Shown one piece after another: positions 1-48,635 of a stretch of 64,000 nucleotides of DNA (the first letter of the stretch is position 1; each line of letters starts with the position of its first letter). The DNA is taken from the IMG/VR virus record IMGVR_UViG_3300032562_000003, positions 194,860 to 258,859 of that record; one strand, written 5' to 3'. The position numbers and the translations under genes were made by a program. The notes below the pieces were generated by a model. The model ran no database searches. It had not been told where the DNA came from and saw only the letters and a list, made by a program, of their open reading frames with translations.

Positions 1-603
1 GAATGCATAGAATTTTATAAAAATAAGACATTAGGTAGGATCGAAAAATACTTGACCAAGTATAACACACAAGAAAAGGTTAGCAGTATTAACGGTGTTG
101 ACGTAAAGGACTATGCATATTACCTAAACAACATCGACTATTCTTATCTTACTGAGACAGTGCAAGCATCTTATATACACGGTGATTTGCAGTTTGATAA
201 TATCGTAATAGGTAAAGACTTCAAGCTCATCGATTGGCGCCCTGATTTTGCAGGTAATACCAACACCGGCGACATATATTATGACTTAGCAAAACTCGCC
301 GGCGGATTCATCATAAATTATAGTAAGATCAAAGAGAACAACTTCAAGGTTGATATTAAAAACAATCATGTTACTTTAGAGATTCCTTATATAGATAACC
401 ACGAACAGTATTTCACCCTATTAAAAAAGTTTGTGAATGAAAAACAGTTAGAGTGGAAGAAAGTGGAATTATTGATTCCTATTATATTTTGGAATATGTC
501 TCCATTACATACTAGTCCCTTCGACAAATTTCTCTGGTACTTAGGTATAAAATTGTTCCAAGAGTATGAAACTAAATACTCTAGCAATGAAGCAGTTTTA
601 TAG
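1..603 (+). CDS. APH/choline-kinase-like phosphotransferase (5' truncated by window)
   Basis: Frame is open from position 1 (ECIEFYKNKTLGRIEKYLTK...). Brenner motif HGDLQFDNI followed by LIDWR and YDLAKL. Confidence 0.7.
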   Translation, partial: ECIEFYKNKTLGRIEKYLTKYNTQEKVSSINGVDVKDYAYYLNNIDYSYLTETVQASYIHGDLQFDNIVIGKDFKLIDWRPDFAGNTNTGDIYYDLAKLAGGFIINYSKIKENNFKVDIKNNHVTLEIPYIDNHEQYFTLLKKFVNEKQLEWKKVELLIPIIFWNMSPLHTSPFDKFLWYLGIKLFQEYETKYSSNEAVL

Positions 604-1324
604 TCTAAGTCAATATCCTGGCAAAACCGGAACTTATTACTACAATTTGTTTTTTGATAAGTTTGGCATTGACGCAACCTATACGGCTTTAGCTTGTAAT
701 CCAAACGAGTTCGAAGATACTTTCAAGCACTTAACAAGCGATCATACTACATATGGTATTAGCGTGAGTATGCCATATAAGAACACTGTAACTTATCTGT
801 GTGATAATCTAGATAGTCTAGCACATAAGTATGGTATTTGCAATACCATAGCTGTGAATAATGGACATACCGTTGGCTACAATTGTGACATATACGGATT
901 GATGGGTATCATATCTGAGATTTCAATCGATGATAAGATTTTGATACTAGGTGACGGATCGATAGGACAGATGTTCTATCATTATCTCATCGAAAACGAT
1001 TATATGAATGTCAATATGTATAGCAGAAAAAACAACAACTGGCATGACAGACATGAACCGGCTGACATTATAATCAATTGTACTAGTTTAGGGACGAGTG
1101 AAGAGGCATCACCATTGCTATCAGTTCCTGATAAAACAAGATGCGTAATTGATCTAGCACTACGTAAAACTATTTTATATGAACAAAGTTTGCAGAGTCA
1201 AGTAAAGTATATAAGTGGTCTGAGTTTTTATGCCCATCAATTTCTAAAGCAGTTTGAGATATATACTGGTATGCATATCACGATTGATCAATTTAACGAG
1301 GCTACAGGAAATGATTATAGATAA
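587..1324 (+). CDS. Shikimate dehydrogenase (AroE)-like NAD(P)-dependent oxidoreductase
   Basis: Motifs GISVSMPYK, CNTI, GYNCD, ILGDGSIG, IINCTSLG and VIDL match the AroE layout. Likely ATG at 587. Confidence 0.75.
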   Translation: MKQFYSLSQYPGKTGTYYYNLFFDKFGIDATYTALACNPNEFEDTFKHLTSDHTTYGISVSMPYKNTVTYLCDNLDSLAHKYGICNTIAVNNGHTVGYNCDIYGLMGIISEISIDDKILILGDGSIGQMFYHYLIENDYMNVNMYSRKNNNWHDRHEPADIIINCTSLGTSEEASPLLSVPDKTRCVIDLALRKTILYEQSLQSQVKYISGLSFYAHQFLKQFEIYTGMHITIDQFNEATGNDYR

Positions 1325-40597: not shown

Positions 40598-41184
40598 TGG
40601 CAAAGGAGCAGGTTCCCGTAGACGAAACGTTGCCCGATCAGGACCTAGTTCTATTTGACGTTTTGGCTGCTATAGACAGAAAAGACTATGGGTACTATGA
40701 TAGATTAACAGCCGCACAACAAAAGAAAATTGTTCCATTTGTTTTAATGCATTGGGTCAGTGCAGTAAAAGCTAACAGAGATATCCAGCGCTATTACGTT
40801 CAAAGTACCGACTATCATGCCAATAAACATTTCTTTAACGAGAATGTACAAGAGCATCCTAAATTGCTTTGGATGATGCTGTGTGCATCTAGTCCGGGTA
40901 TAGGCAAACAATTCCATCAGTGGGTACCCCAAATCAAAGAACGTGTAGTTAAATTACGCGAAAACGCAAAGCCTAAAGAAATTAAGGAATATTTCAAGAA
41001 GATTTATCCTAAATCAAGTGATGCAGACGTTGCCCTAATCACTGAGGTTTACATTGAAAATCACAAGAAAAAGATGTATCTTGCTGATAAGTTCCCTACA
41101 TTAAAGTACGACGAGATTGAGTTGTTAAGTGACCTTATTACAGACGACGACATTGAACACTACGAAAAAGCCTGGGGAAACTAA
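40597..41184 (+). CDS. Hypothetical protein, possibly clamp-loader small subunit (gp62)-like
   Basis: Helical protein in replication context; weak recalled resemblance only. Confidence 0.4.
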   Translation: MAKEQVPVDETLPDQDLVLFDVLAAIDRKDYGYYDRLTAAQQKKIVPFVLMHWVSAVKANRDIQRYYVQSTDYHANKHFFNENVQEHPKLLWMMLCASSPGIGKQFHQWVPQIKERVVKLRENAKPKEIKEYFKKIYPKSSDADVALITEVYIENHKKKMYLADKFPTLKYDEIELLSDLITDDDIEHYEKAWGN

Positions 41185-41860
41185 ACCAGAATTTAGTTGT
41201 GAGTTTTGCAATCGTGGGTTTCAGAAAGAAACGACCATGATGAATCACCTATGCGAAAATAAACGCAGATGGCAAGATAAGGACTTAGCTGGAAACAGAA
41301 TTGGCTTTCATTCTTGGTTACGCTTCTACAAAAAGAACACGGCTTCCAAAAAGACAAAAACATATTTGGACTTTACAAAAAGTGCATATTACCTTGCTTT
41401 CGTTAAGTTCGGTCACTATTGCGTGAACGTTAACGTACTTAATGTCAACGCTTATGCGGATTGGTTGCTAAAGAACGATGTTAAGATTGACAGTTGGTGC
41501 AGCGATACGAATTATACTAAATTCATCATTGATTATCTAAAAACCGAAGACCCCCTAGACGCGATTGCTCGCAGCATAGAAACCTGTATTGCTAAGGCCA
41601 ACGAAGAAGGTATTCAAAGCAAAGACTATCTTCGCTACGGCAATCGTAACAAGCTATGTCACATTATAACTACGGGTAAAATCAGTCCATGGATGTTATA
41701 TCAATGCCCTAGTGGCATCGATTTACTAGAAAGTTTTGACGAACTACAACAGAAGATGGTTCTAGATTACATTAATCCAGAACAATGGGCAATTAAATTT
41801 AGACGAAGCGCTGATAGAGTACCTCAAGTAAAATCTCTGTTAACTTCGGCCGGATTTTAA
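41129..41860 (+). CDS. Hypothetical protein with N-terminal zinc finger
   Basis: FSCEFCNRGFQKETTMMNHLC. Confidence 0.65.
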   Translation: MTLLQTTTLNTTKKPGETKPEFSCEFCNRGFQKETTMMNHLCENKRRWQDKDLAGNRIGFHSWLRFYKKNTASKKTKTYLDFTKSAYYLAFVKFGHYCVNVNVLNVNAYADWLLKNDVKIDSWCSDTNYTKFIIDYLKTEDPLDAIARSIETCIAKANEEGIQSKDYLRYGNRNKLCHIITTGKISPWMLYQCPSGIDLLESFDELQQKMVLDYINPEQWAIKFRRSADRVPQVKSLLTSAGF

Positions 41861-42138
41861 TGATGTACTATCAACAGGATATAAATCCGTTCAGTGAACC
41901 ACCAAGTTTTGCGTATATATACGGTAAGACATATTACATAGTATATACATTTAATATTGCAGAATGTAAAGAATGGTGTACGCGAATGTTTGGAGAATCA
42001 GGTAATGATCAAACCATTTCAGCTAGATGGTATGATCCAGAATTAGTAAGTGGCACTGGTGCTCGGTACAAGATACCCAATGCGTTCTACCTAAGAGATG
42101 AAAAAGACCTGTTATGGTTTAACATGAGATGGTCATGA
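41860..42138 (+). CDS. Small protein, FxxExDxxxFxL[RK]W-like family
   Basis: Ends YLRDEKDLLWFNMRWS. Confidence 0.6.
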   Translation: MMYYQQDINPFSEPPSFAYIYGKTYYIVYTFNIAECKEWCTRMFGESGNDQTISARWYDPELVSGTGARYKIPNAFYLRDEKDLLWFNMRWS

Positions 42139-42329
42139 CGGAGATAACTGTTGTAAAGTTAAATACCGAAAATACCGATAATCTGCGAGAAGTAGAAAAT
42201 TGGGCAATTAGCAATTGTCCTACATTTTTAGGATTGGAACTGGATTGCGGGTTATATGGTTTTACCTACACTGAGTTTTATTTTGAAACCGACAAAGATG
42301 CGGTTATGTTTTCATTGAGGTGGTTATGA
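42129..42329 (+). CDS. Small protein, FxxExDxxxFxL[RK]W-like family
   Basis: Ends YFETDKDAVMFSLRWL. Confidence 0.6.
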   Translation: MVMTEITVVKLNTENTDNLREVENWAISNCPTFLGLELDCGLYGFTYTEFYFETDKDAVMFSLRWL

Positions 42330-42541
42330 ACACTGCTGATCTTGAGCGCCGCCTATTTGATATGTACGCCTTTGCTGAATATACTCCTGCTTTGATAGAA
42401 CAAATAAAAGATGAGATAATGCAAATTTATCCGGAACTAGATGATGTTATCATAACAGTTGACTCAGATTACAATATGAGTGTCCGACTGGTAATACACG
42501 ATGAAGCTATTTTAGCTTGGTTTATGCTTAAGTATCAATGA
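42320..42541 (+). CDS. Small protein, FxxExDxxxFxL[RK]W-like family
   Basis: Ends IHDEAILAWFMLKYQ. Confidence 0.55.
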   Translation: MVMNTADLERRLFDMYAFAEYTPALIEQIKDEIMQIYPELDDVIITVDSDYNMSVRLVIHDEAILAWFMLKYQ

Positions 42542-42840
42542 TTTATAGAGAACATTATAATCAGCAGGTTAGAGTAGTAGATTATGATTCATCTATTAAA
42601 GAACAAATGAATTGGCAAGAAACCAAACCGGGTTGGTATGAGGCAGTAGTCATACATAACGGAACAACCTATCAAGCACAGCATCGAAAGCACGACGAAG
42701 TAGTACAATGGTTATATGATAACATAGACATGTGCGAGCGGCATTGCAGATGGGCTGTGGATCCTAGTAACAATCCTAATGCTACTAGAGTTAAGTTTAG
42801 ATATGAGAAAGATTATATGTGGTTTAAGTTGCGATGGTAG
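42538..42840 (+). CDS. Small protein, FxxExDxxxFxL[RK]W-like family
   Basis: Ends KFRYEKDYMWFKLRW. Confidence 0.6.
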   Translation: MIYREHYNQQVRVVDYDSSIKEQMNWQETKPGWYEAVVIHNGTTYQAQHRKHDEVVQWLYDNIDMCERHCRWAVDPSNNPNATRVKFRYEKDYMWFKLRW

Positions 42841-43046
42841 AACAACGAAAAATACGGAAAAAGATATGGTTATACGGTGAATGGCATGATATGACATTCA
42901 TTCTGTTGCCACAAACTAAGGAATTAGAAGACTGGTGCAACCAGTATTATCGAACCAAACGAGAATACTTAGGTGCATGGTTTAAAACACATTCACATAT
43001 TGTCATGGACGAGAAAACTTATGTCCATTGGAAGCTATGTGAATAG
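42834..43046 (+). CDS. Small protein, divergent member of same family
   Basis: Ends VMDEKTYVHWKLCE. Confidence 0.55.
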   Translation: MVEQRKIRKKIWLYGEWHDMTFILLPQTKELEDWCNQYYRTKREYLGAWFKTHSHIVMDEKTYVHWKLCE

Positions 43047-43109
43047 TTATCCGAATTACTTGAATCACACCATAATGTAAAGTATGTTTAAATTTGAAAG
43101 GTACTAACT

Positions 43110-43658
43110 ATGGCACATATTATGCTTGACATGGAGACGCTGGACACAGCGCCAACCACTGTCATTCTAACTATCGGACTCGTTAAGTTTGATCCGCGCG
43201 GGTCAGGCGTAATCGAGAAACTAGAACTTCGTCCAACCATTGACGAACAAACAGATACTTTTGGTCGAAGCATCAGTGACGACACCCTTCGTTGGTGGAG
43301 TACTCAGAGCGCAGAAGCGATCAACGAATCTATGGGAGACCAGGACAGAATCTCTTACAAAGAATGTATGGAAAAGCTGTACAAGTTTTGTTGGAATCAA
43401 CAGGCTATCTGGTCCAACGGCGCAGGGTTCGATGTGGTGGTAGCAGAGAATGCATTCCGTGAATTAGACATGCGTATTCCCTGGCCCTTTTGGACTATTC
43501 GTGACTGTCGTACAATCTACGATCTTGCAGGTGTGTCGTTGAAAGATGACGGGCACGTCACTACTCACAAAGCAGTAGAAGATGCCGAACGCCAGGCTAT
43601 CGTGGTTCAACGTGCTTACCAAAAGTTAATTAAGGCTGGCTTTACTCATATCAAATGA
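43110..43658 (+). CDS. DEDDh 3'-5' exonuclease (Rv2179c-like)
   Basis: IMLDMETL (ExoI), WSNGAGFD (ExoII), RDCRT and HKAVEDA (ExoIII). Confidence 0.85.
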   Translation: MAHIMLDMETLDTAPTTVILTIGLVKFDPRGSGVIEKLELRPTIDEQTDTFGRSISDDTLRWWSTQSAEAINESMGDQDRISYKECMEKLYKFCWNQQAIWSNGAGFDVVVAENAFRELDMRIPWPFWTIRDCRTIYDLAGVSLKDDGHVTTHKAVEDAERQAIVVQRAYQKLIKAGFTHIK

Positions 43659-44236
43659 GAATAGATTCAGACATTGACATTGATTTGGGAAATCGTGACG
43701 CAGTGTTGTCACTGATTAAGCATGTCCATGCTGCAATGCGAAAAGTCAATCCTATCAGAAAGCACCCGTCTGGTATATATCCCACAGATATTCCTTATGA
43801 TCCCGTGTATGACATGGCTGCAATCGATTATGCAGAAGCAGAAGCCCGTGGCTATTTTAAGATTGATTTACTGAATGTTTACGTATATAATATGGTCAAA
43901 GATGAAGAACATCTAATTAGGTTAATGCAAGAACCGGATTGGTCAATGCTCAATGATAAAAATATCGTTGAGCAACTGATTCACTTGAATAGCCAATTTG
44001 AAGCAGTTAGACGAATGCCGGAGCCTATAAACTCTATTCCTAGGCTGGCCATGTTTCTTGCAGCAATTAGACCTGCGAAGCGACACTTGCTTAATAAGAC
44101 CTGGAAAGAAATAAACGAGACTGTTTGGGAAAAGGATCAGACTGGTTATGCTTATAAACGTAGCCACGCGATTAGTTACAGTCACTTAGTGGTGGTACAC
44201 ATGAATTTACTAAAAGAAAACAGTGAGAAAGTTTAA
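43655..44236 (+). CDS. Miniature DnaE/Pol III alpha-like protein (193 aa)
   Basis: Family C motifs in the correct order: SDIDID, KHPSG, GYFKIDLL, AAIRP and GYAYKRSHAISY. Confidence 0.75.
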   Translation: MRIDSDIDIDLGNRDAVLSLIKHVHAAMRKVNPIRKHPSGIYPTDIPYDPVYDMAAIDYAEAEARGYFKIDLLNVYVYNMVKDEEHLIRLMQEPDWSMLNDKNIVEQLIHLNSQFEAVRRMPEPINSIPRLAMFLAAIRPAKRHLLNKTWKEINETVWEKDQTGYAYKRSHAISYSHLVVVHMNLLKENSEKV

Positions 44237-44265
44237 ATAAATACTACATACAATGGAGTATTTAT
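44237..44265 (+). promoter_or_regulatory. Late promoter within an RBS-occluding hairpin
   Basis: ATAAATACT (44237-45, contains TAAATA) is the reverse complement of AGTATTTAT (44257-65), which overlaps GGAG at 44255-58. Confidence 0.65.
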
Positions 44266-44955
44266 ATGGGAAGACCAAAAGGTTCAAAGAACAAGATTCA
44301 ATCAGGTATTGCTTATCCTCGAAAATGCAATCATTGCGATTATGTATCTAATAATCCACAGATGTGGCATTATCACGACAAGACACACCAAATGATACCT
44401 GATGGAACTAGGTGTCAGTTTGGCTGTGGGAATACCGCAAGATTTAGGAATACCAAAGGAACTTATTCCTGCTCTAAAATATCACAACACTGTCCGGGTT
44501 ATTTAGAGAAACATTCCGAAAGAATTAAAGAACACTGGCAAAGACCGGAAGCAGTAGCTAGAAAAGAAGAAACTGCAAGGTCACTACGAAAACGTTTACA
44601 CAATAATGAAAATTATGAAAAGGTGTCTAATACTAGACGCAAAAAGTTTGGAACATACGATCCGGAACGAGCGGTAGATTATCGCCACTACGCCCGGCTT
44701 GTCCGGGCTCGGGCCCAAAAATGGGCTACTGAAAATGGGCATGTTTTGGGAAAACAGACTTATCATGTTGATCATCGGTTTAGTGTATTAGACGCATGGA
44801 AGAACAACTTACCGGAGCATATAGTTAATCACCCTGCCAATCTTCGCATACTTGAAGCAAGGGTAAACTCAAGTAAAGGGTCAAAAAGCGAGTTGACTCT
44901 TGACGAATTATATACTATGATCGAAGAACATGATACACGAAATGATGACACCTAA
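44266..44955 (+). CDS. HNH homing endonuclease with N-terminal zinc-binding motifs
   Basis: CNHC, CQFGC and CS...HC; C-terminal YHVDHRFS...HPANLRILEARVNSSKG. Confidence 0.8.
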   Translation: MGRPKGSKNKIQSGIAYPRKCNHCDYVSNNPQMWHYHDKTHQMIPDGTRCQFGCGNTARFRNTKGTYSCSKISQHCPGYLEKHSERIKEHWQRPEAVARKEETARSLRKRLHNNENYEKVSNTRRKKFGTYDPERAVDYRHYARLVRARAQKWATENGHVLGKQTYHVDHRFSVLDAWKNNLPEHIVNHPANLRILEARVNSSKGSKSELTLDELYTMIEEHDTRNDDT

Positions 44956-45017: not shown

Positions 45018-45365
45018 ATGCGTAATCACATTCGAGAAATGTGTGAAAAGCATTTCAACGAACCAGTACTGGTAGACACTGAGGTTGTGCGGTTGATTGG
45101 ATACGCCGAAGACAAACACGATGCCTATCTGATCATGAAAAAGGCAGACGGATCTGTCTACTGGCACAGTGCAGTAGGTGGATACATATTTCTTGATTGC
45201 CTAAAAAGTCAAGGATATGTCATCTCAACTGAGGGTGAACCGTGGGATGATTTTTACAGGTTGGACTGCCAGTTGGAGTTTAGCAGTTGTCCCAAAGAAA
45301 AAGAATTCTTAATAGACCTGAGACCAGAGCAAGGTTGGGAATGGGAAACTGATGACAGTGAATGA
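45018..45365 (+). CDS. Hypothetical protein
   Basis: 115-aa ORF. Confidence 0.55.
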   Translation: MRNHIREMCEKHFNEPVLVDTEVVRLIGYAEDKHDAYLIMKKADGSVYWHSAVGGYIFLDCLKSQGYVISTEGEPWDDFYRLDCQLEFSSCPKEKEFLIDLRPEQGWEWETDDSE

Positions 45366-45636
45366 AGAAATTCTAGTTATTACAGCAGAAGAATGTGCCG
45401 AGGTAACACAGATAGTAACTAAATCACTTCGATTTGGTTTGGACTCTAACTTTACTGGTCCGACTAATAGACAGCTACTGGCTAATGAGTTAGGTGATCT
45501 ATTGTGCATGGTAGACTTATTGGTATCACGAGGAATTATCTCAGCAGACCAACTAGAGATATCAAAGGCAGCTAAGCTAGAACGTCTAAAAATCTGGTCT
45601 AACATTTTTGCAGGAAAAGGAGATGAAATTAATTAA
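45352..45636 (+). CDS. MazG-like NTP pyrophosphohydrolase
   Basis: ITAEECAEVTQ...LANELGDLL. Confidence 0.78.
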   Translation: MTVNEEILVITAEECAEVTQIVTKSLRFGLDSNFTGPTNRQLLANELGDLLCMVDLLVSRGIISADQLEISKAAKLERLKIWSNIFAGKGDEIN

Positions 45637-45871
45637 CATTAGGTTAGTATTACAGGCCATCTGGGACGGTGTAAAGTGGTTACCTATTACAATTGGTGTT
45701 GTTGCGTTGATATTTAGTGAAATATATGCGTTAAGACATTTTGGATATGTTGCGACCGCCATCATATTTGGACTGATAGTACTGATAACAGTCATTGTAG
45801 TTAGATATGTGCAACTATACGACGAAGACAAAATGGGTAAAGAAAAAATGATGGATGTGTTAAAGCGATGA
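45623..45871 (+). CDS. Small membrane protein
   Basis: Two hydrophobic stretches. Confidence 0.55.
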   Translation: MKLINIRLVLQAIWDGVKWLPITIGVVALIFSEIYALRHFGYVATAIIFGLIVLITVIVVRYVQLYDEDKMGKEKMMDVLKR

Positions 45872-46365
45872 AATTAGAACTCTTAAAAGAAAACGATCCG
45901 CAACTATTAGAAGTTTCCGAATTATGGGATTTTGAAGTTGACGGTGATCCGACCGATCTAGTAAAGGAAATGGTTCGTGTTCTAACTGAAAACGGGGGCG
46001 TCGGTCTTGCCGCTCCGCAGTGCGGAATTAAGAAGCGTATCTTTATCATGGGTAACTTTACTAAGATGGTTGTCTGCATCAATCCAAAGATTGTCGCGTT
46101 ATCAGAGGAACGAGACTTTTCGCTTGAAGGCTGTCTAAGCTTTCCTAATCTTTACCTTAAGGTAAAGAGGCCCGCCGGCGCCATGGTTGAATATCAAACG
46201 ACCACAGGAGAAACCAAACAAGAAGAAATTTCTGGGTTTATGGCCCGTGTTTTCCTTCATGAGTATGATCATCTGATGGGAATAACATTTGATCAGCGTG
46301 TGGGTGATCTTAGTATGAAAATGGCTAAAGAAAAGAGAACCAAAGACGCAAAAAAAGGCCGCTAG
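45868..46365 (+). CDS. def: Peptide deformylase
   Basis: GVGLAAPQCG, EGCLSFP and HEYDHLMG. Confidence 0.95.
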   Translation: MKLELLKENDPQLLEVSELWDFEVDGDPTDLVKEMVRVLTENGGVGLAAPQCGIKKRIFIMGNFTKMVVCINPKIVALSEERDFSLEGCLSFPNLYLKVKRPAGAMVEYQTTTGETKQEEISGFMARVFLHEYDHLMGITFDQRVGDLSMKMAKEKRTKDAKKGR

Positions 46366-46742
46366 GGCAAACGCTTAACCAGTGTGATGCTCTTTCTTTT
46401 AGCCCGCTTTTTAGTAAATTCAGTAATGCTAACTACGGGTCCGTGAAGAACGATCAAACTCTTGTTATTGAATGTTCGAATGTATGGTCTAAAGATAGCC
46501 CATTCTTCTTTGAGAAATATGTTGATGGGGATCGATCTATTCGATTCCCACCACCATATATCACCTAATTCTAAAAACTTAGCTCGCAACTCAGACTGAA
46601 CTATTGCACCATAGTCATAGAGCGTAGTGACCATATCATCCCTGTTTTGAATGATGCCCACATAATCTTGTTGCGCATAGGAACACACCGAAATAAACGG
46701 GTGATTTTCACTTAATTTCTTGAAAAATTCGTTGCTGCTCAT
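46362..46742 (-). CDS. Hypothetical phage protein
   Basis: 126-aa ORF convergent on def; WWWESNRSIPINIFL. Confidence 0.7.
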   Translation of the reverse strand: MSSNEFFKKLSENHPFISVCSYAQQDYVGIIQNRDDMVTTLYDYGAIVQSELRAKFLELGDIWWWESNRSIPINIFLKEEWAIFRPYIRTFNNKSLIVLHGPVVSITEFTKKRAKRKSITLVKRLP

Positions 46743-47657: not shown

Positions 47658-48635
47658 ATGTTTAATATTCTGTCAGTAATTCCGGGAAAAAAGAAGACTA
47701 CCGGTAGTGGCTGGATTAGCTTTAATGCACCGTGCTGTCATCATCGCGGTCATAAAGCAGATAAACGTATGCGCGGCGGAATCAAGTTTATAACAGACGT
47801 TAACTGGTCGTTTCATTGCTTTAACTGCGATTACAAGTGCGGATTTACCTTAGGTAAACAAATTAGTAAGAATCTACGACAATTATTGCTTTGGTGCGGT
47901 GTCGGTGACAGTGAGATTACTAAATGGAATTTTGAGAGCCTTCAGCATCGAGATTTAGTAGACCTATATACGATAAAGAAAAATCTCAAGAAAGTAAGAT
48001 TTAATGAGATACCGCTACCACAAAATGCTATAATGATTGATTCTGCCTGTCCTGAGCATAAACCTTTTATAGACTATCTTTCCACAAGAGGATTTCAACC
48101 AAACGATTATCCATTTTTAATCACTCCTAAAGATGAAGGTAGAAATGCTAATAGAATTATCATTCCATATACTTTCAATAATAAAGTTGTCGGTCATATA
48201 AGCAGATATCTAGATGACAGATTTCCCAAATATATTAAGGAGCAACAACCCGGATTCGTATTTGGCTTCGACTTACAAAAACCAGAATGGGAAGTATGTA
48301 TCGTTGTTGAGGGCATATTTGACGCACTCAGTATCAATGGCTGCGCACTAACTCATGATACTATAAGCGACGAACAAGCAGAGGTTCTTCGTCGCCTTAA
48401 TAAACGTATTATTGTAGTTCCTGATTTGGATAAGACAGGGCTAGCTATATGTGACCGAGCGCTAGATTTGGGTTTTCAGGTGAGTATACCAAATTGGGCC
48501 GAAGGAATAAAAGACACCAATGATGCTGTTAGAAAGTATGGAAGACTTCCTACTCTGCTAAGTATATTGCAAAGCGCAACTACTAGCAAAATCAAGCTTA
48601 AGATGCAACGGAGAACGCTTGACAAAAGAATATAA
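47658..48635 (+). CDS. DNA primase (gp61-like)
   Basis: Zinc domain APCC...HCFNC; TOPRIM VVEGIFDA and PDLDKTG; KDTNDA. Confidence 0.88.
   Translation: MFNILSVIPGKKKTTGSGWISFNAPCCHHRGHKADKRMRGGIKFITDVNWSFHCFNCDYKCGFTLGKQISKNLRQLLLWCGVGDSEITKWNFESLQHRDLVDLYTIKKNLKKVRFNEIPLPQNAIMIDSACPEHKPFIDYLSTRGFQPNDYPFLITPKDEGRNANRIIIPYTFNNKVVGHISRYLDDRFPKYIKEQQPGFVFGFDLQKPEWEVCIVVEGIFDALSINGCALTHDTISDEQAEVLRRLNKRIIVVPDLDKTGLAICDRALDLGFQVSIPNWAEGIKDTNDAVRKYGRLPTLLSILQSATTSKIKLKMQRRTLDKRI

What the first reader, a model, noticed from the sequence alone, without database searches (positions are those of the whole stretch)
43110..44236. 193-aa DnaE-like polymerase core coupled to a separate DEDDh exonuclease
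Seen: the family C catalytic motifs (DIDID, HPSG, KIDLL, IRP, GYAYKRSHA..Y) are compressed into 193 aa with a normal start and stop, ATGA-coupled to a 3'-5' exonuclease. No PHP, clamp-binding or OB region is present. Established: cellular DnaE is over 1000 aa and uses three aspartates corresponding to DxD and KxD. Inference: a minimal C-family nucleotidyltransferase with a trans proofreader, possibly for priming, repair or template-independent synthesis. Short DnaE-like genes are, to my recollection, annotated in related large phages, but I know of no functional work.
Basis: partly seen in the sequence, partly recalled or inferred. Interest (0 to 1): 0.72.

Follow-up and report, generated by a model that had tools for sequence, protein, structure and literature searches.

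The report
Half of a split mini-DnaE polymerase
The 193-aa gene is real and DnaE-like, but it is only the C-terminal half of a two-gene, stripped-down Pol III alpha-type polymerase that was already described by sequence analysis in this group of giant phages, and its pairing with the neighbouring exonuclease is a lineage-specific gene arrangement rather than a demonstrated proofreading partnership.

Summary
The exonuclease is 43110-43658 (182 aa, DEDDh, Pfam Rv2179c-like). It overlaps by ATGA a 193-aa ORF (43655-44236) whose model (pLDDT 96.7) matches only Pol III alpha/PolC structures (Z up to 9.5; E. coli residues 397-781).

The 193-aa protein is not a self-contained core. The NTP-binding half of the palm (GRGS motif, E. 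coli alpha 239-392) is a separate 169-aa gene at C1:109974-110483, outside the window.

- Both pieces keep their lengths and gene neighbourhoods in PA5oct, 121Q/RaK2-like, Atu_ph07 and Phosso phages and in thousands of metagenomic clusters.
- A natural fused 375-aa form exists.
- Complex prediction scores 0.91, against 0.00 for the best control.
- The genome also carries a proofreading family B polymerase.

Iyer et al. 2021 (PMC7824862) described this split minimal Pol III alpha for group 2.2 jumbo phages; I found no biochemistry.

The exonuclease lies upstream in 44 of 69 close relatives. It is absent from PA5oct and Atu_ph07 and elsewhere in 121Q and Phosso, and its family reaches T4-type DexA. 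The HNH-like gene is a rare, polymorphic insertion that truncates nothing.

Verdict: a new member of a known, uncharacterised kind.

The parts
43655..44236 (+). C-terminal subunit (193 aa) of the split minimal Pol III alpha-like polymerase. It holds the Mg2+-binding palm half (D6, D8, D71, K69) and trimmed fingers (R139-P140, K168/R169-S170-H171). A short hairpin stands where cellular enzymes carry the thumb.
   Evidence: phrog_11778 at E 2e-55. AF2 model pLDDT 96.7. The Foldseek top 15 hits are all Pol III alpha. VIA-align gives Z 8.8-9.5 to E. coli 397..781 and Taq 459..841, with the next unrelated chain at Z 3.5.
43110..43658 (+). DEDDh 3'-5' exonuclease (182 aa) of the Rv2179c-like / phage DexA-related family. 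It overlaps the polymerase piece by ATGA.
   Evidence: PF16473 at E 4e-33 and phrog_255 'exonuclease'. The DEDDh residues are present. tblastn finds 549 phage records, including dexA of KVP40 and other T4-type phages. It lies upstream of the C-piece in 44 of 69 IMG/VR relatives. It is absent or elsewhere in the cultured relatives.
44266..44955 (+). HNH-like 229-aa ORF, a rare and polymorphic insertion downstream of the polymerase piece. It is not part of the enzyme.
   Evidence: Only weak zinc-finger Pfam hits and unknown-function PHROGs. The HNH call rests on my reading of the C-terminal H-x-D-H...N...N motif. It is present at this place in 2 of 69 relatives. In 3 of 4 lake runs a second form replaces 44588-44939 by 938 other letters.
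46362..46742 (-). Conserved convergent 126-aa ORF of unknown function (phrog_11637, WWWESNR motif, basic C-terminal tail). It is the most constant neighbour of the C-piece.
   Evidence: Downstream of the C-piece in 69 of 69 IMG/VR relatives. It is 38-46% identical to the ORFs at the same place in 121Q, PA5oct and Phosso. No similarity to DnaE or to any solved structure.
41129..41860 (+). Conserved 243-aa zinc-finger-like ORF (phrog_11058). It is the ancestral upstream neighbour of the C-piece. The exonuclease and five small ORFs (41860-43046) lie in the variable slot between the two.
   Evidence: 33% identical to PA5oct gp219, which directly precedes the C-piece there, and 26% identical to 121Q gp14.
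47658..48635 (+). Toprim DNA primase. With the DnaB-like helicase that follows it in relatives, it forms the conserved replication block next to the C-piece.
   Evidence: Pfam Toprim_2. The order C-piece, convergent ORF, structural protein, primase, helicase is the same in PA5oct, Phosso, 121Q and the metagenomic relatives.

Best explanation
The 193-aa ORF is the C-terminal subunit of a two-gene, minimal Pol III alpha-type (C-family) polymerase. This enzyme is typical of T4-related 'group 2.2' jumbo phages such as RaK2/121Q, PA5oct and Atu_ph07.

The partner is a 169-aa protein encoded at C1:109974-110483, outside the window. It supplies the first half of the Pol-beta-like palm with the GRGS triphosphate-binding motif.

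The window's ORF supplies the three catalytic aspartates, the conserved lysine and a shortened fingers domain.

The two chains assemble non-covalently into a core of about 360 aa. That core has no PHP domain, no thumb, no distal fingers, no clamp-binding region and no OB fold.

Shown here:
- homology and fold
- the split and its conservation
- co-occurrence with a proofreading family B replicase
- a natural fused form

Inferred: the heterodimer is an active, poorly processive, template-directed DNA polymerase. It would serve beside the family B replicase in gap filling, repair or extension of primers, given that its genes sit beside the primase-helicase and clamp-loader blocks.

The upstream exonuclease is a DexA/Rv2179c-like DEDDh enzyme that entered a variable gene slot in the freshwater subclade. 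Whether it works with the polymerase is open.
For: N-piece:
- PF07733 at E 1e-9 to 2e-11.
- It aligns to E. coli alpha residues 239-392 and ends 8 residues before the first catalytic aspartate (D401) of DFDVDF.
- NCBIfam Pol III alpha models all stop at its residue 168.
- All 20 aligned N-pieces end in EFLK followed by a stop.

C-piece:
- The structural alignment starts at E. coli residue 397 and runs to 781.
- The catalytic residues are invariant.

Fusion:
- P0162 (375 aa) joins both parts through a 10-residue linker.
- Its N part is 33% identical to the own N-piece (E 3e-22).
- Its PF07733 match runs across the junction.

Complex: ipSAE is 0.91 in three runs against 0.00 for the best of 3 controls, with about 170 contacts. 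The mark was reached by 58 of 80 solved complexes and 2 of 110 mismatched pairs, roughly, because my own alignments were used.

Co-occurrence:
- 96 and 79 phage records respectively, all jumbo phages.
- The N-piece is on 3 of 5 partial contigs that carry the C-piece.
- Each family has at least 7,900 clusters of constant length.

Family B polymerase with its own exonuclease domain.

Literature: Iyer et al. 2021 describe the same split minimal enzyme.
Against: - No biochemistry exists for any member.
- Sequence-only comparison of the C-piece with cellular DnaE is weak. There is no HMM hit in the PDB, and hhalign finds only the KSH motif at 14.6% probability.
- Loss of the thumb and distal fingers might abolish normal primer-template handling, so the substrate could be something other than primed DNA.
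- The complex score could partly reflect the model's memory of single-chain Pol III alpha.
- In this record the two genes are 128 kb apart on opposite strands, unlike relatives. This may be an assembly or inversion issue.
Confidence: 0.85

Rival explanations
1. One reading: the 193-aa protein alone is a complete minimal C-family nucleotidyltransferase that works with the upstream exonuclease as a trans proofreader.
For: All three catalytic aspartates and the fingers motifs lie in the 193 aa. It has ATGA coupling with a DEDDh exonuclease. The exonuclease lies directly adjacent in 25 of 69 relatives.
Against: - The triphosphate-binding GS half of the palm is absent from the 193 aa and is encoded by a co-occurring 169-aa gene.
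- A fused form exists and the complex prediction is strong.
- The exonuclease is absent from PA5oct and Atu_ph07 and lies elsewhere in 121Q and Phosso.
- The PHP domain, to which cellular epsilon binds (established knowledge), is missing.
Confidence: 0.04
2. In the freshwater subclade the Rv2179c/DexA-like exonuclease has been recruited as a dedicated editing subunit of the split mini-polymerase, giving a three-piece enzyme. This is compatible with the best explanation and adds to it.
For: The exonuclease is upstream on the same strand in 44 of 69 relatives, directly adjacent in 25, and overlaps by ATGA here. The mini-polymerase has no editing domain of its own.
Against: - 23 of 69 close relatives and the cultured relatives lack the linkage.
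- The slot is variable and also holds unrelated small ORFs.
- Stop-start overlaps are usual in this block.
- The family is common in phages that have no mini-Pol III, and it reaches T4-type DexA. T4 DexA is an oligonucleotide-degrading salvage enzyme (my knowledge, not tested here).
Confidence: 0.15
3. The heterodimer is a Pol-beta-fold nucleotidyltransferase with a non-replicative chemistry, such as template-independent tailing, RNA-primer handling only, or synthesis of a nucleotide product, rather than a templated DNA polymerase.
For: The thumb, distal fingers and all processivity modules are lost. A complete proofreading family B replicase is present.
Against: Fingers residues that are conserved in Pol III alpha (R-P, K/R-S-H) stay nearly invariant. 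The only structural relatives are replicative C-family polymerases. The genes lie in replication blocks.
Confidence: 0.1
4. The short ORF is a fragment of a long DnaE that was truncated by the HNH-like insertion or by decay (a pseudogene).
For: An HNH-like ORF follows 30 nt downstream.
Against: - Relatives without the HNH-like gene (67 of 69) have the same C-piece length of 183-220 aa.
- Cultured relatives end at the same point, with a convergent conserved ORF right behind.
- Catalytic residues are invariant over at least 90 diverse sequences.
- No further DnaE domains are found in the record.
Confidence: 0.01

Closest known systems
Split minimal DNA polymerase III alpha of group 2.2 jumbo phages (Iyer, Anantharaman, Krishnan, Burroughs, Aravind 2021, Viruses 13:63; PMC7824862)
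   Same: Two standalone proteins are encoded by distant genes: an N-terminal NTP-binding part and a C-terminal Mg2+- and template-binding part. There are no other Pol III domains. The enzyme sits beside a family B polymerase and a T4-like replisome. The phage clade is the same (Atu_ph07, 121Q/RaK2-like, PA5oct).
   Different: Here the C-piece is directly preceded by a DEDDh exonuclease and followed by an HNH-like insertion, peptide deformylase and a MazG-like gene. The host phage is an uncultured freshwater lineage. In this record the two pieces lie on opposite strands 128 kb apart.
Cellular Pol III alpha (DnaE) and PolC, e.g. E. coli 2HNH, Taq 2HPI/3E0D, M. tuberculosis DnaE1 5LEW/7PU7
   Same: A Pol-beta-like palm with the GS motif, the DxD plus D catalytic triad and the KxD lysine, and fingers motifs R-P and K-S-H. 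VIA-align gives Z 8.8-9.5 over 186-189 of 193 residues. The N-piece aligns to residues 239-392.
   Different: - About 360 aa in two chains, against 1,000-1,400 aa in one.
- No PHP domain, no thumb (D8 to H37 is 29 residues, against 108 from D403 to H511), nothing beyond E. coli residue ~781, no beta-binding, HhH or OB region.
- Pfam and NCBIfam models do not detect the C-piece.
Cyanobacterial split DnaE joined by a split intein
   Same: DnaE is encoded as two distant genes.
   Different: There is no intein. The N-piece ends in an invariant EFLK-stop and the C-piece starts at Met five residues before the first catalytic Asp, so there is no room for intein halves. The pieces are expected to associate non-covalently. 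The comparison rests on my knowledge of split inteins and not on a tool test.
Rv2179c-like / phage DexA-type DEDDh exonucleases (PF16473)
   Same: The Pfam match is far above the cut-off, the DEDDh residues are present, and the size is that of a standalone protein. tblastn links it to phage 'exonuclease', '3'-5' exoribonuclease' and dexA genes.
   Different: It is only 23-38% identical to any cultured-phage member. The position next to a polymerase piece is specific to this subclade.

Membership tests
Split minimal Pol III alpha of group 2.2 jumbo phages | C-terminal Mg2+/template-binding part as a standalone protein of about 190-200 aa | tested here: met
   193 aa. phrog_11778 (197 positions) at E 2e-55. 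93 of 96 phage records cover at least 80% of it.
Split minimal Pol III alpha of group 2.2 jumbo phages | N-terminal NTP-binding part as a separate, distantly encoded protein in the same genome | tested here: met
   169-aa ORF at C1:109974-110483 with PF07733 and phrog_11127 matches. It is 128 kb from the C-piece.
Split minimal Pol III alpha of group 2.2 jumbo phages | Accompanied by a family B polymerase and T4-like replisome genes; no other Pol III domains | tested here: met
   Family B polymerase with an exonuclease domain. Primase in the window, DnaB-like helicase after it in relatives, and GroES next to the N-piece as in relatives. No PHP, PF17657 or HHH_6.
Split minimal Pol III alpha of group 2.2 jumbo phages | The two proteins reconstitute one enzyme | tested here: inconclusive
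   Prediction only: ipSAE 0.91 against 0.00 for the best control, and a natural fusion, P0162. No experiment exists.
C-family DNA polymerase (Pol III alpha / PolC) | Pol-beta-like palm with three catalytic aspartates and the conserved lysine | tested here: met
   D6, D8, D71 and K69 are invariant in 90 sequences. The structural match is to Pol III alpha only.
C-family DNA polymerase (Pol III alpha / PolC) | GS (GRGS) triphosphate-binding motif in the same polypeptide | tested here: not met
   The motif lies in the separate 169-aa protein at residues 137-140.
C-family DNA polymerase (Pol III alpha / PolC) | PHP domain, thumb, full fingers, beta-clamp-binding and OB domains | tested here: not met
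   No Pfam PHP, fingers or HHH_6 domain in the record. 186 residues are aligned over a 385-residue span of the E. coli chain, ending at 781. The motif spacing shows the thumb is missing.
C-family DNA polymerase (Pol III alpha / PolC) | Template-directed DNA synthesis | not testable with these tools
   Needs a primer-extension assay.
DEDDh exonuclease, Rv2179c-like (PF16473) | Pfam match above the gathering score and the D-E-D-D-h catalytic residues | tested here: met
   115 bits against a cut-off of 27. D7, E9, D108, H153 and D158 are present.
Pol III epsilon-type proofreading subunit | Conserved association with the polymerase, by binding to the PHP domain or by conserved linkage | tested here: not met
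   There is no PHP domain. The linkage is missing in PA5oct, Atu_ph07, 121Q, Phosso and 23 of 69 close relatives. Physical binding was not tested.

The most novel reading that the evidence does not exclude
In the freshwater lineage the DexA/Rv2179c-like exonuclease has become a dedicated editing subunit of the split, thumbless mini-Pol III. This would give a three-gene C-family polymerase-exonuclease that docks without a PHP domain. It would be a natural minimal model of a proofreading C-family enzyme, possibly acting as the primer-extending or gap-filling partner of the family B replicase.
Probability: 0.15. Interest if true: 0.6.

Novelty: new member of a known kind. Interest (0 to 1): 0.4.

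Why it matters
A C-family polymerase core of about 360 aa in two chains, without a thumb, is the smallest known relative of the bacterial replicase. It is very abundant in nature: each piece has at least 7,900 clusters at 90% identity.

If it is active, it defines the minimal catalytic unit of Pol III alpha. That bears on how this polymerase family arose, and Iyer et al. proposed it as a model of the ancestral state. It could also show why phages that already have a complete family B replicase keep a second polymerase.

For this finding the main value is corrective:
- The gene must be read together with its distant partner.
- The exonuclease link should be treated as a hypothesis limited to one subclade.

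Tried and rejected
- blastn of the region against cultured phages found no match.
- An HMM profile of the C-piece against PDB sequences gave no hit even at E 10. hhalign against E. coli DnaE gave only the KSH motif for the C-piece and residues 348-392 for the N-piece. The homology of the C-piece therefore rests on structure.
- A first joint alignment of the fused protein with both pieces (A3) was misaligned by MAFFT. A corrected one (A4) still gave a poor AF2 model of the fusion (pLDDT 52.6), which I did not use.
- The conserved convergent 126-aa ORF is not a missing thumb or other DnaE part: no similarity to E. coli DnaE, to solved structures or to named Atlas clusters.
- Truncation by the HNH-like gene is rejected.
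- An intein-based split is rejected on sequence ends and lengths.
- The PA5oct omics paper has nothing on these genes. Literature searches found no functional work.
- An exonuclease-polymerase interaction could not be predicted, because the single complex job went to the N plus C pair.

Full report
**What is at the coordinates.** The window is the last 64 kb (C1:194860-258859, + strand) of a 258,859-bp IMG/VR virus record that CheckV rates 73% complete.
- ORF 43110-43658 (182 aa) and ORF 43655-44236 (193 aa) are both on the + strand and overlap in ATGA.
- The first is a DEDDh exonuclease. It matches Pfam PF16473 (Rv2179c-like) at E 4e-33 and has D7, E9, D108, H153 and D158.
- The second has no Pfam or NCBIfam hit. 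It matches phrog_11778 'DNA polymerase', a profile of only 197 positions, at E 2e-55.
- The 2-kb region is held almost word for word by at least 20 freshwater and lake metagenome runs from 2017 to 2023. Contigs of four of these runs cover 42600-44583 without a difference, so the arrangement is real.

**The 193-aa protein is Pol III alpha-like by structure.**
- With an alignment of 90 homologues, AlphaFold2 gives pLDDT 96.7 and pTM 0.89.
- Foldseek's 15 best PDB matches are all Pol III alpha (probability up to 0.98, but E only 0.035).
- VIA-align aligns 186-189 of the 193 residues to several structures:
  - Taq alpha 459-841 (Z 9.5)
  - M. tuberculosis DnaE1 417-808 (Z 9.2)
  - E. coli alpha 397-781 (Z 8.8)
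  - PolC 967-1301 (Z 7.7)
  - The first unrelated chain scores Z 3.5.
- D6, D8 and D71 correspond to E. coli D401, D403 and D555, and K69 to K553. These residues and P140 are invariant in 90 sequences of 27% mean column identity.
- The spacing from D8 to H37 is 29 residues, against 108 from D403 to H511 in E. coli. The thumb is therefore replaced by a hairpin.
- The chain ends at about E. coli residue 781, so the distal fingers, the clamp-binding domain and the OB domain are missing.
- No PHP, PF17657 or HHH_6 domain is found anywhere in the record.

**It is only half of the catalytic domain.** A PF07733 search of the whole record finds a second DnaE-like gene, a 169-aa ORF at C1:109974-110483 on the - strand.
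- It aligns to E. coli alpha residues 239-392. It carries the GRGS triphosphate-binding motif and ends eight residues before the first catalytic aspartate (D401) of DFDVDF.
- Ten NCBIfam Pol III alpha models all stop at its residue 168.
- All 20 aligned homologues end in EFLK followed by a stop.
- The C-piece's structural match begins at E. coli residue 397, so the two ORFs are consecutive parts of one palm.

**Evidence that the two pieces belong together.**
- Co-occurrence in cultured phages. tblastn finds the C-piece in 96 and the N-piece in 79 phage records, all of them jumbo phages: PA5oct-like, 121Q/PBECO4/RaK2/GAP32/CBB-like, Atu_ph07, Phosso, SCTP-2 and Xanthomonas jumbo phages. The two pieces are always far apart.
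- Conserved neighbourhoods.
  - The C-piece is followed by a convergent small ORF, a structural protein, the primase and a DnaB-like helicase.
  - The N-piece is followed by a small ORF, GroES and the clamp loader.
- Abundance in metagenomes. Each piece has at least 7,900 clusters at 90% identity, of constant length. The N-piece lies 42-45 kb from the C-piece on 3 of 5 partial contigs.
- A natural fusion. A profile search of 1.84 billion representatives gives 438 clusters, nearly all of about 190-200 aa, plus one 375-aa protein, P0162.
  - P0162 joins both parts through a 10-residue linker.
  - Its N part is 33% identical to the own N-piece (E 3e-22).
  - Its PF07733 match runs across the junction.
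  - It rests on a single 2.4-kb contig.
- Complex prediction. The own N and C pieces score ipSAE 0.91 in three runs, against 0.00 for the best of three controls, with about 170 contacts. That mark was reached by 58 of 80 solved complexes and 2 of 110 mismatched pairs; the counts hold only roughly because my own alignments were used, and memory of single-chain Pol III alpha may contribute.

**It is already in the literature.** Iyer et al. 2021 (PMC7824862, sections 3.4.1 and 3.5) describe it for group 2.2 jumbo phages.
- They note that it accompanies a family B polymerase.
- They suggest a role in synthesis of one strand or in repair.
- I found no biochemical work on it.
- As in that description, this record has a family B polymerase with its own exonuclease domain.

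**The exonuclease link.**
- In 69 IMG/VR relatives with enough upstream sequence:
  - 44 have the exonuclease upstream on the same strand, directly adjacent in 25 and 200-1242 nt away in 19
  - 23 have none there
  - 2 have it elsewhere in the locus.
- Two close relatives have a 67-74-aa ORF between the exonuclease and the C-piece.
- PA5oct and Atu_ph07 have no PF16473 gene. 121Q and Phosso have one far from either polymerase piece.
- The ancestral upstream neighbour of the C-piece is a 243-aa zinc-finger-like ORF (41129-41860). The exonuclease and five small ORFs lie in a variable slot between them.
- Stop-start overlaps are the rule in this block.
- The exonuclease family occurs in 549 phage records, most without any mini-Pol III, and it reaches dexA of KVP40 and other T4-type phages.
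- A proofreading partnership is therefore possible in this subclade, but it is neither conserved nor tested.

**The HNH-like gene.**
- It is present at this place in 2 of 69 relatives, and the C-piece has the same length with or without it.
- In three of four lake runs a second form replaces 44588-44939 by 938 other letters.
- It is a mobile, polymorphic insertion and does not truncate the polymerase piece.

**Mechanism.**
- Shown: the fold, the conserved catalytic residues, the split, the co-occurrence and the fusion.
- Inferred: the two chains form one Pol-beta-like active site. The N-piece GS motif holds the triphosphate. The C-piece aspartates hold two Mg2+ ions. The trimmed fingers hold the template and the incoming nucleotide.
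- Without a thumb and without clamp contacts, synthesis should be short-patch.
- Possible roles are gap filling, repair, or extension of primers beside the family B replicase. The primer-extension idea is an analogy from my own knowledge of DnaE extending RNA primers for PolC in Bacillus. It is not a result of this work.

**Verdict.** This is a new member of a known but biochemically unstudied kind. The modest additions here are the natural fusion, the structural quantification, the subclade-specific exonuclease linkage and the HNH polymorphism.

Noticed in passing
G000:C1:72953-76791 (L102), outside the window: The family B polymerase is itself in two ORFs. One has 558 aa (exonuclease domain plus polymerase profile positions 11-138) and the other 413 aa (polymerase profile positions 146 onward). 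About 900 nt separate them and hold an opposite-strand 299-aa ORF with weak PD-(D/E)xK restriction-endonuclease-like hits. It looks like a gp43A/gp43B-type split with a homing-endonuclease-like insert.
   Followed up: partly
window 44588-44939: This is a population polymorphism. In three of four lake runs a 1002-nt contig replaces this 352-nt 3' part of the HNH-like ORF by 938 other letters, alongside the window's form. In run X4 the alternative form has the higher depth.
   Followed up: no
window end (64000 = C1:258859) and C1:~106000-124000: Relative G002 is colinear with own 235.4-258.4 kb up to the end of the record. It then continues into a block that in the own record lies at 123.6 to 106 kb in reverse. 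This is either a large inversion or an assembly join. It explains why the N-piece here is on the opposite strand 128 kb away, while in relatives it is on the same strand 31-45 kb away.
   Followed up: partly
window 46362-46742 (-): This 126-aa ORF (phrog_11637) has an invariant WWW motif and a basic C-terminal tail. It lies convergent to the C-piece in 69 of 69 relatives and in 121Q, PA5oct and Phosso. Its function is unknown, with no match to DnaE, the PDB or named Atlas clusters.
   Followed up: partly
window 45352-46365: A MazG-like ORF (weak, E 3e-4) and a peptide deformylase (E 2e-37) are cargo between the C-piece and the convergent ORF. The deformylase is present in 22 of 69 relatives at this place.
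   Followed up: no
window 41860-43046: This is a run of five small overlapping ORFs (92, 66, 73, 100 and 70 aa) without family matches, in the variable slot upstream of the exonuclease. Several end in similar ...W(F/L)..(R/K)W(S/L) tails, which may indicate paralogues.
   Followed up: no
L020 (metagenome contig, 2415 bp), 1066-2193: P0162 is a single-chain 375-aa version of the mini-Pol III with both halves fused. It was the only such protein among the 150 best of 438 clusters.
   Followed up: partly
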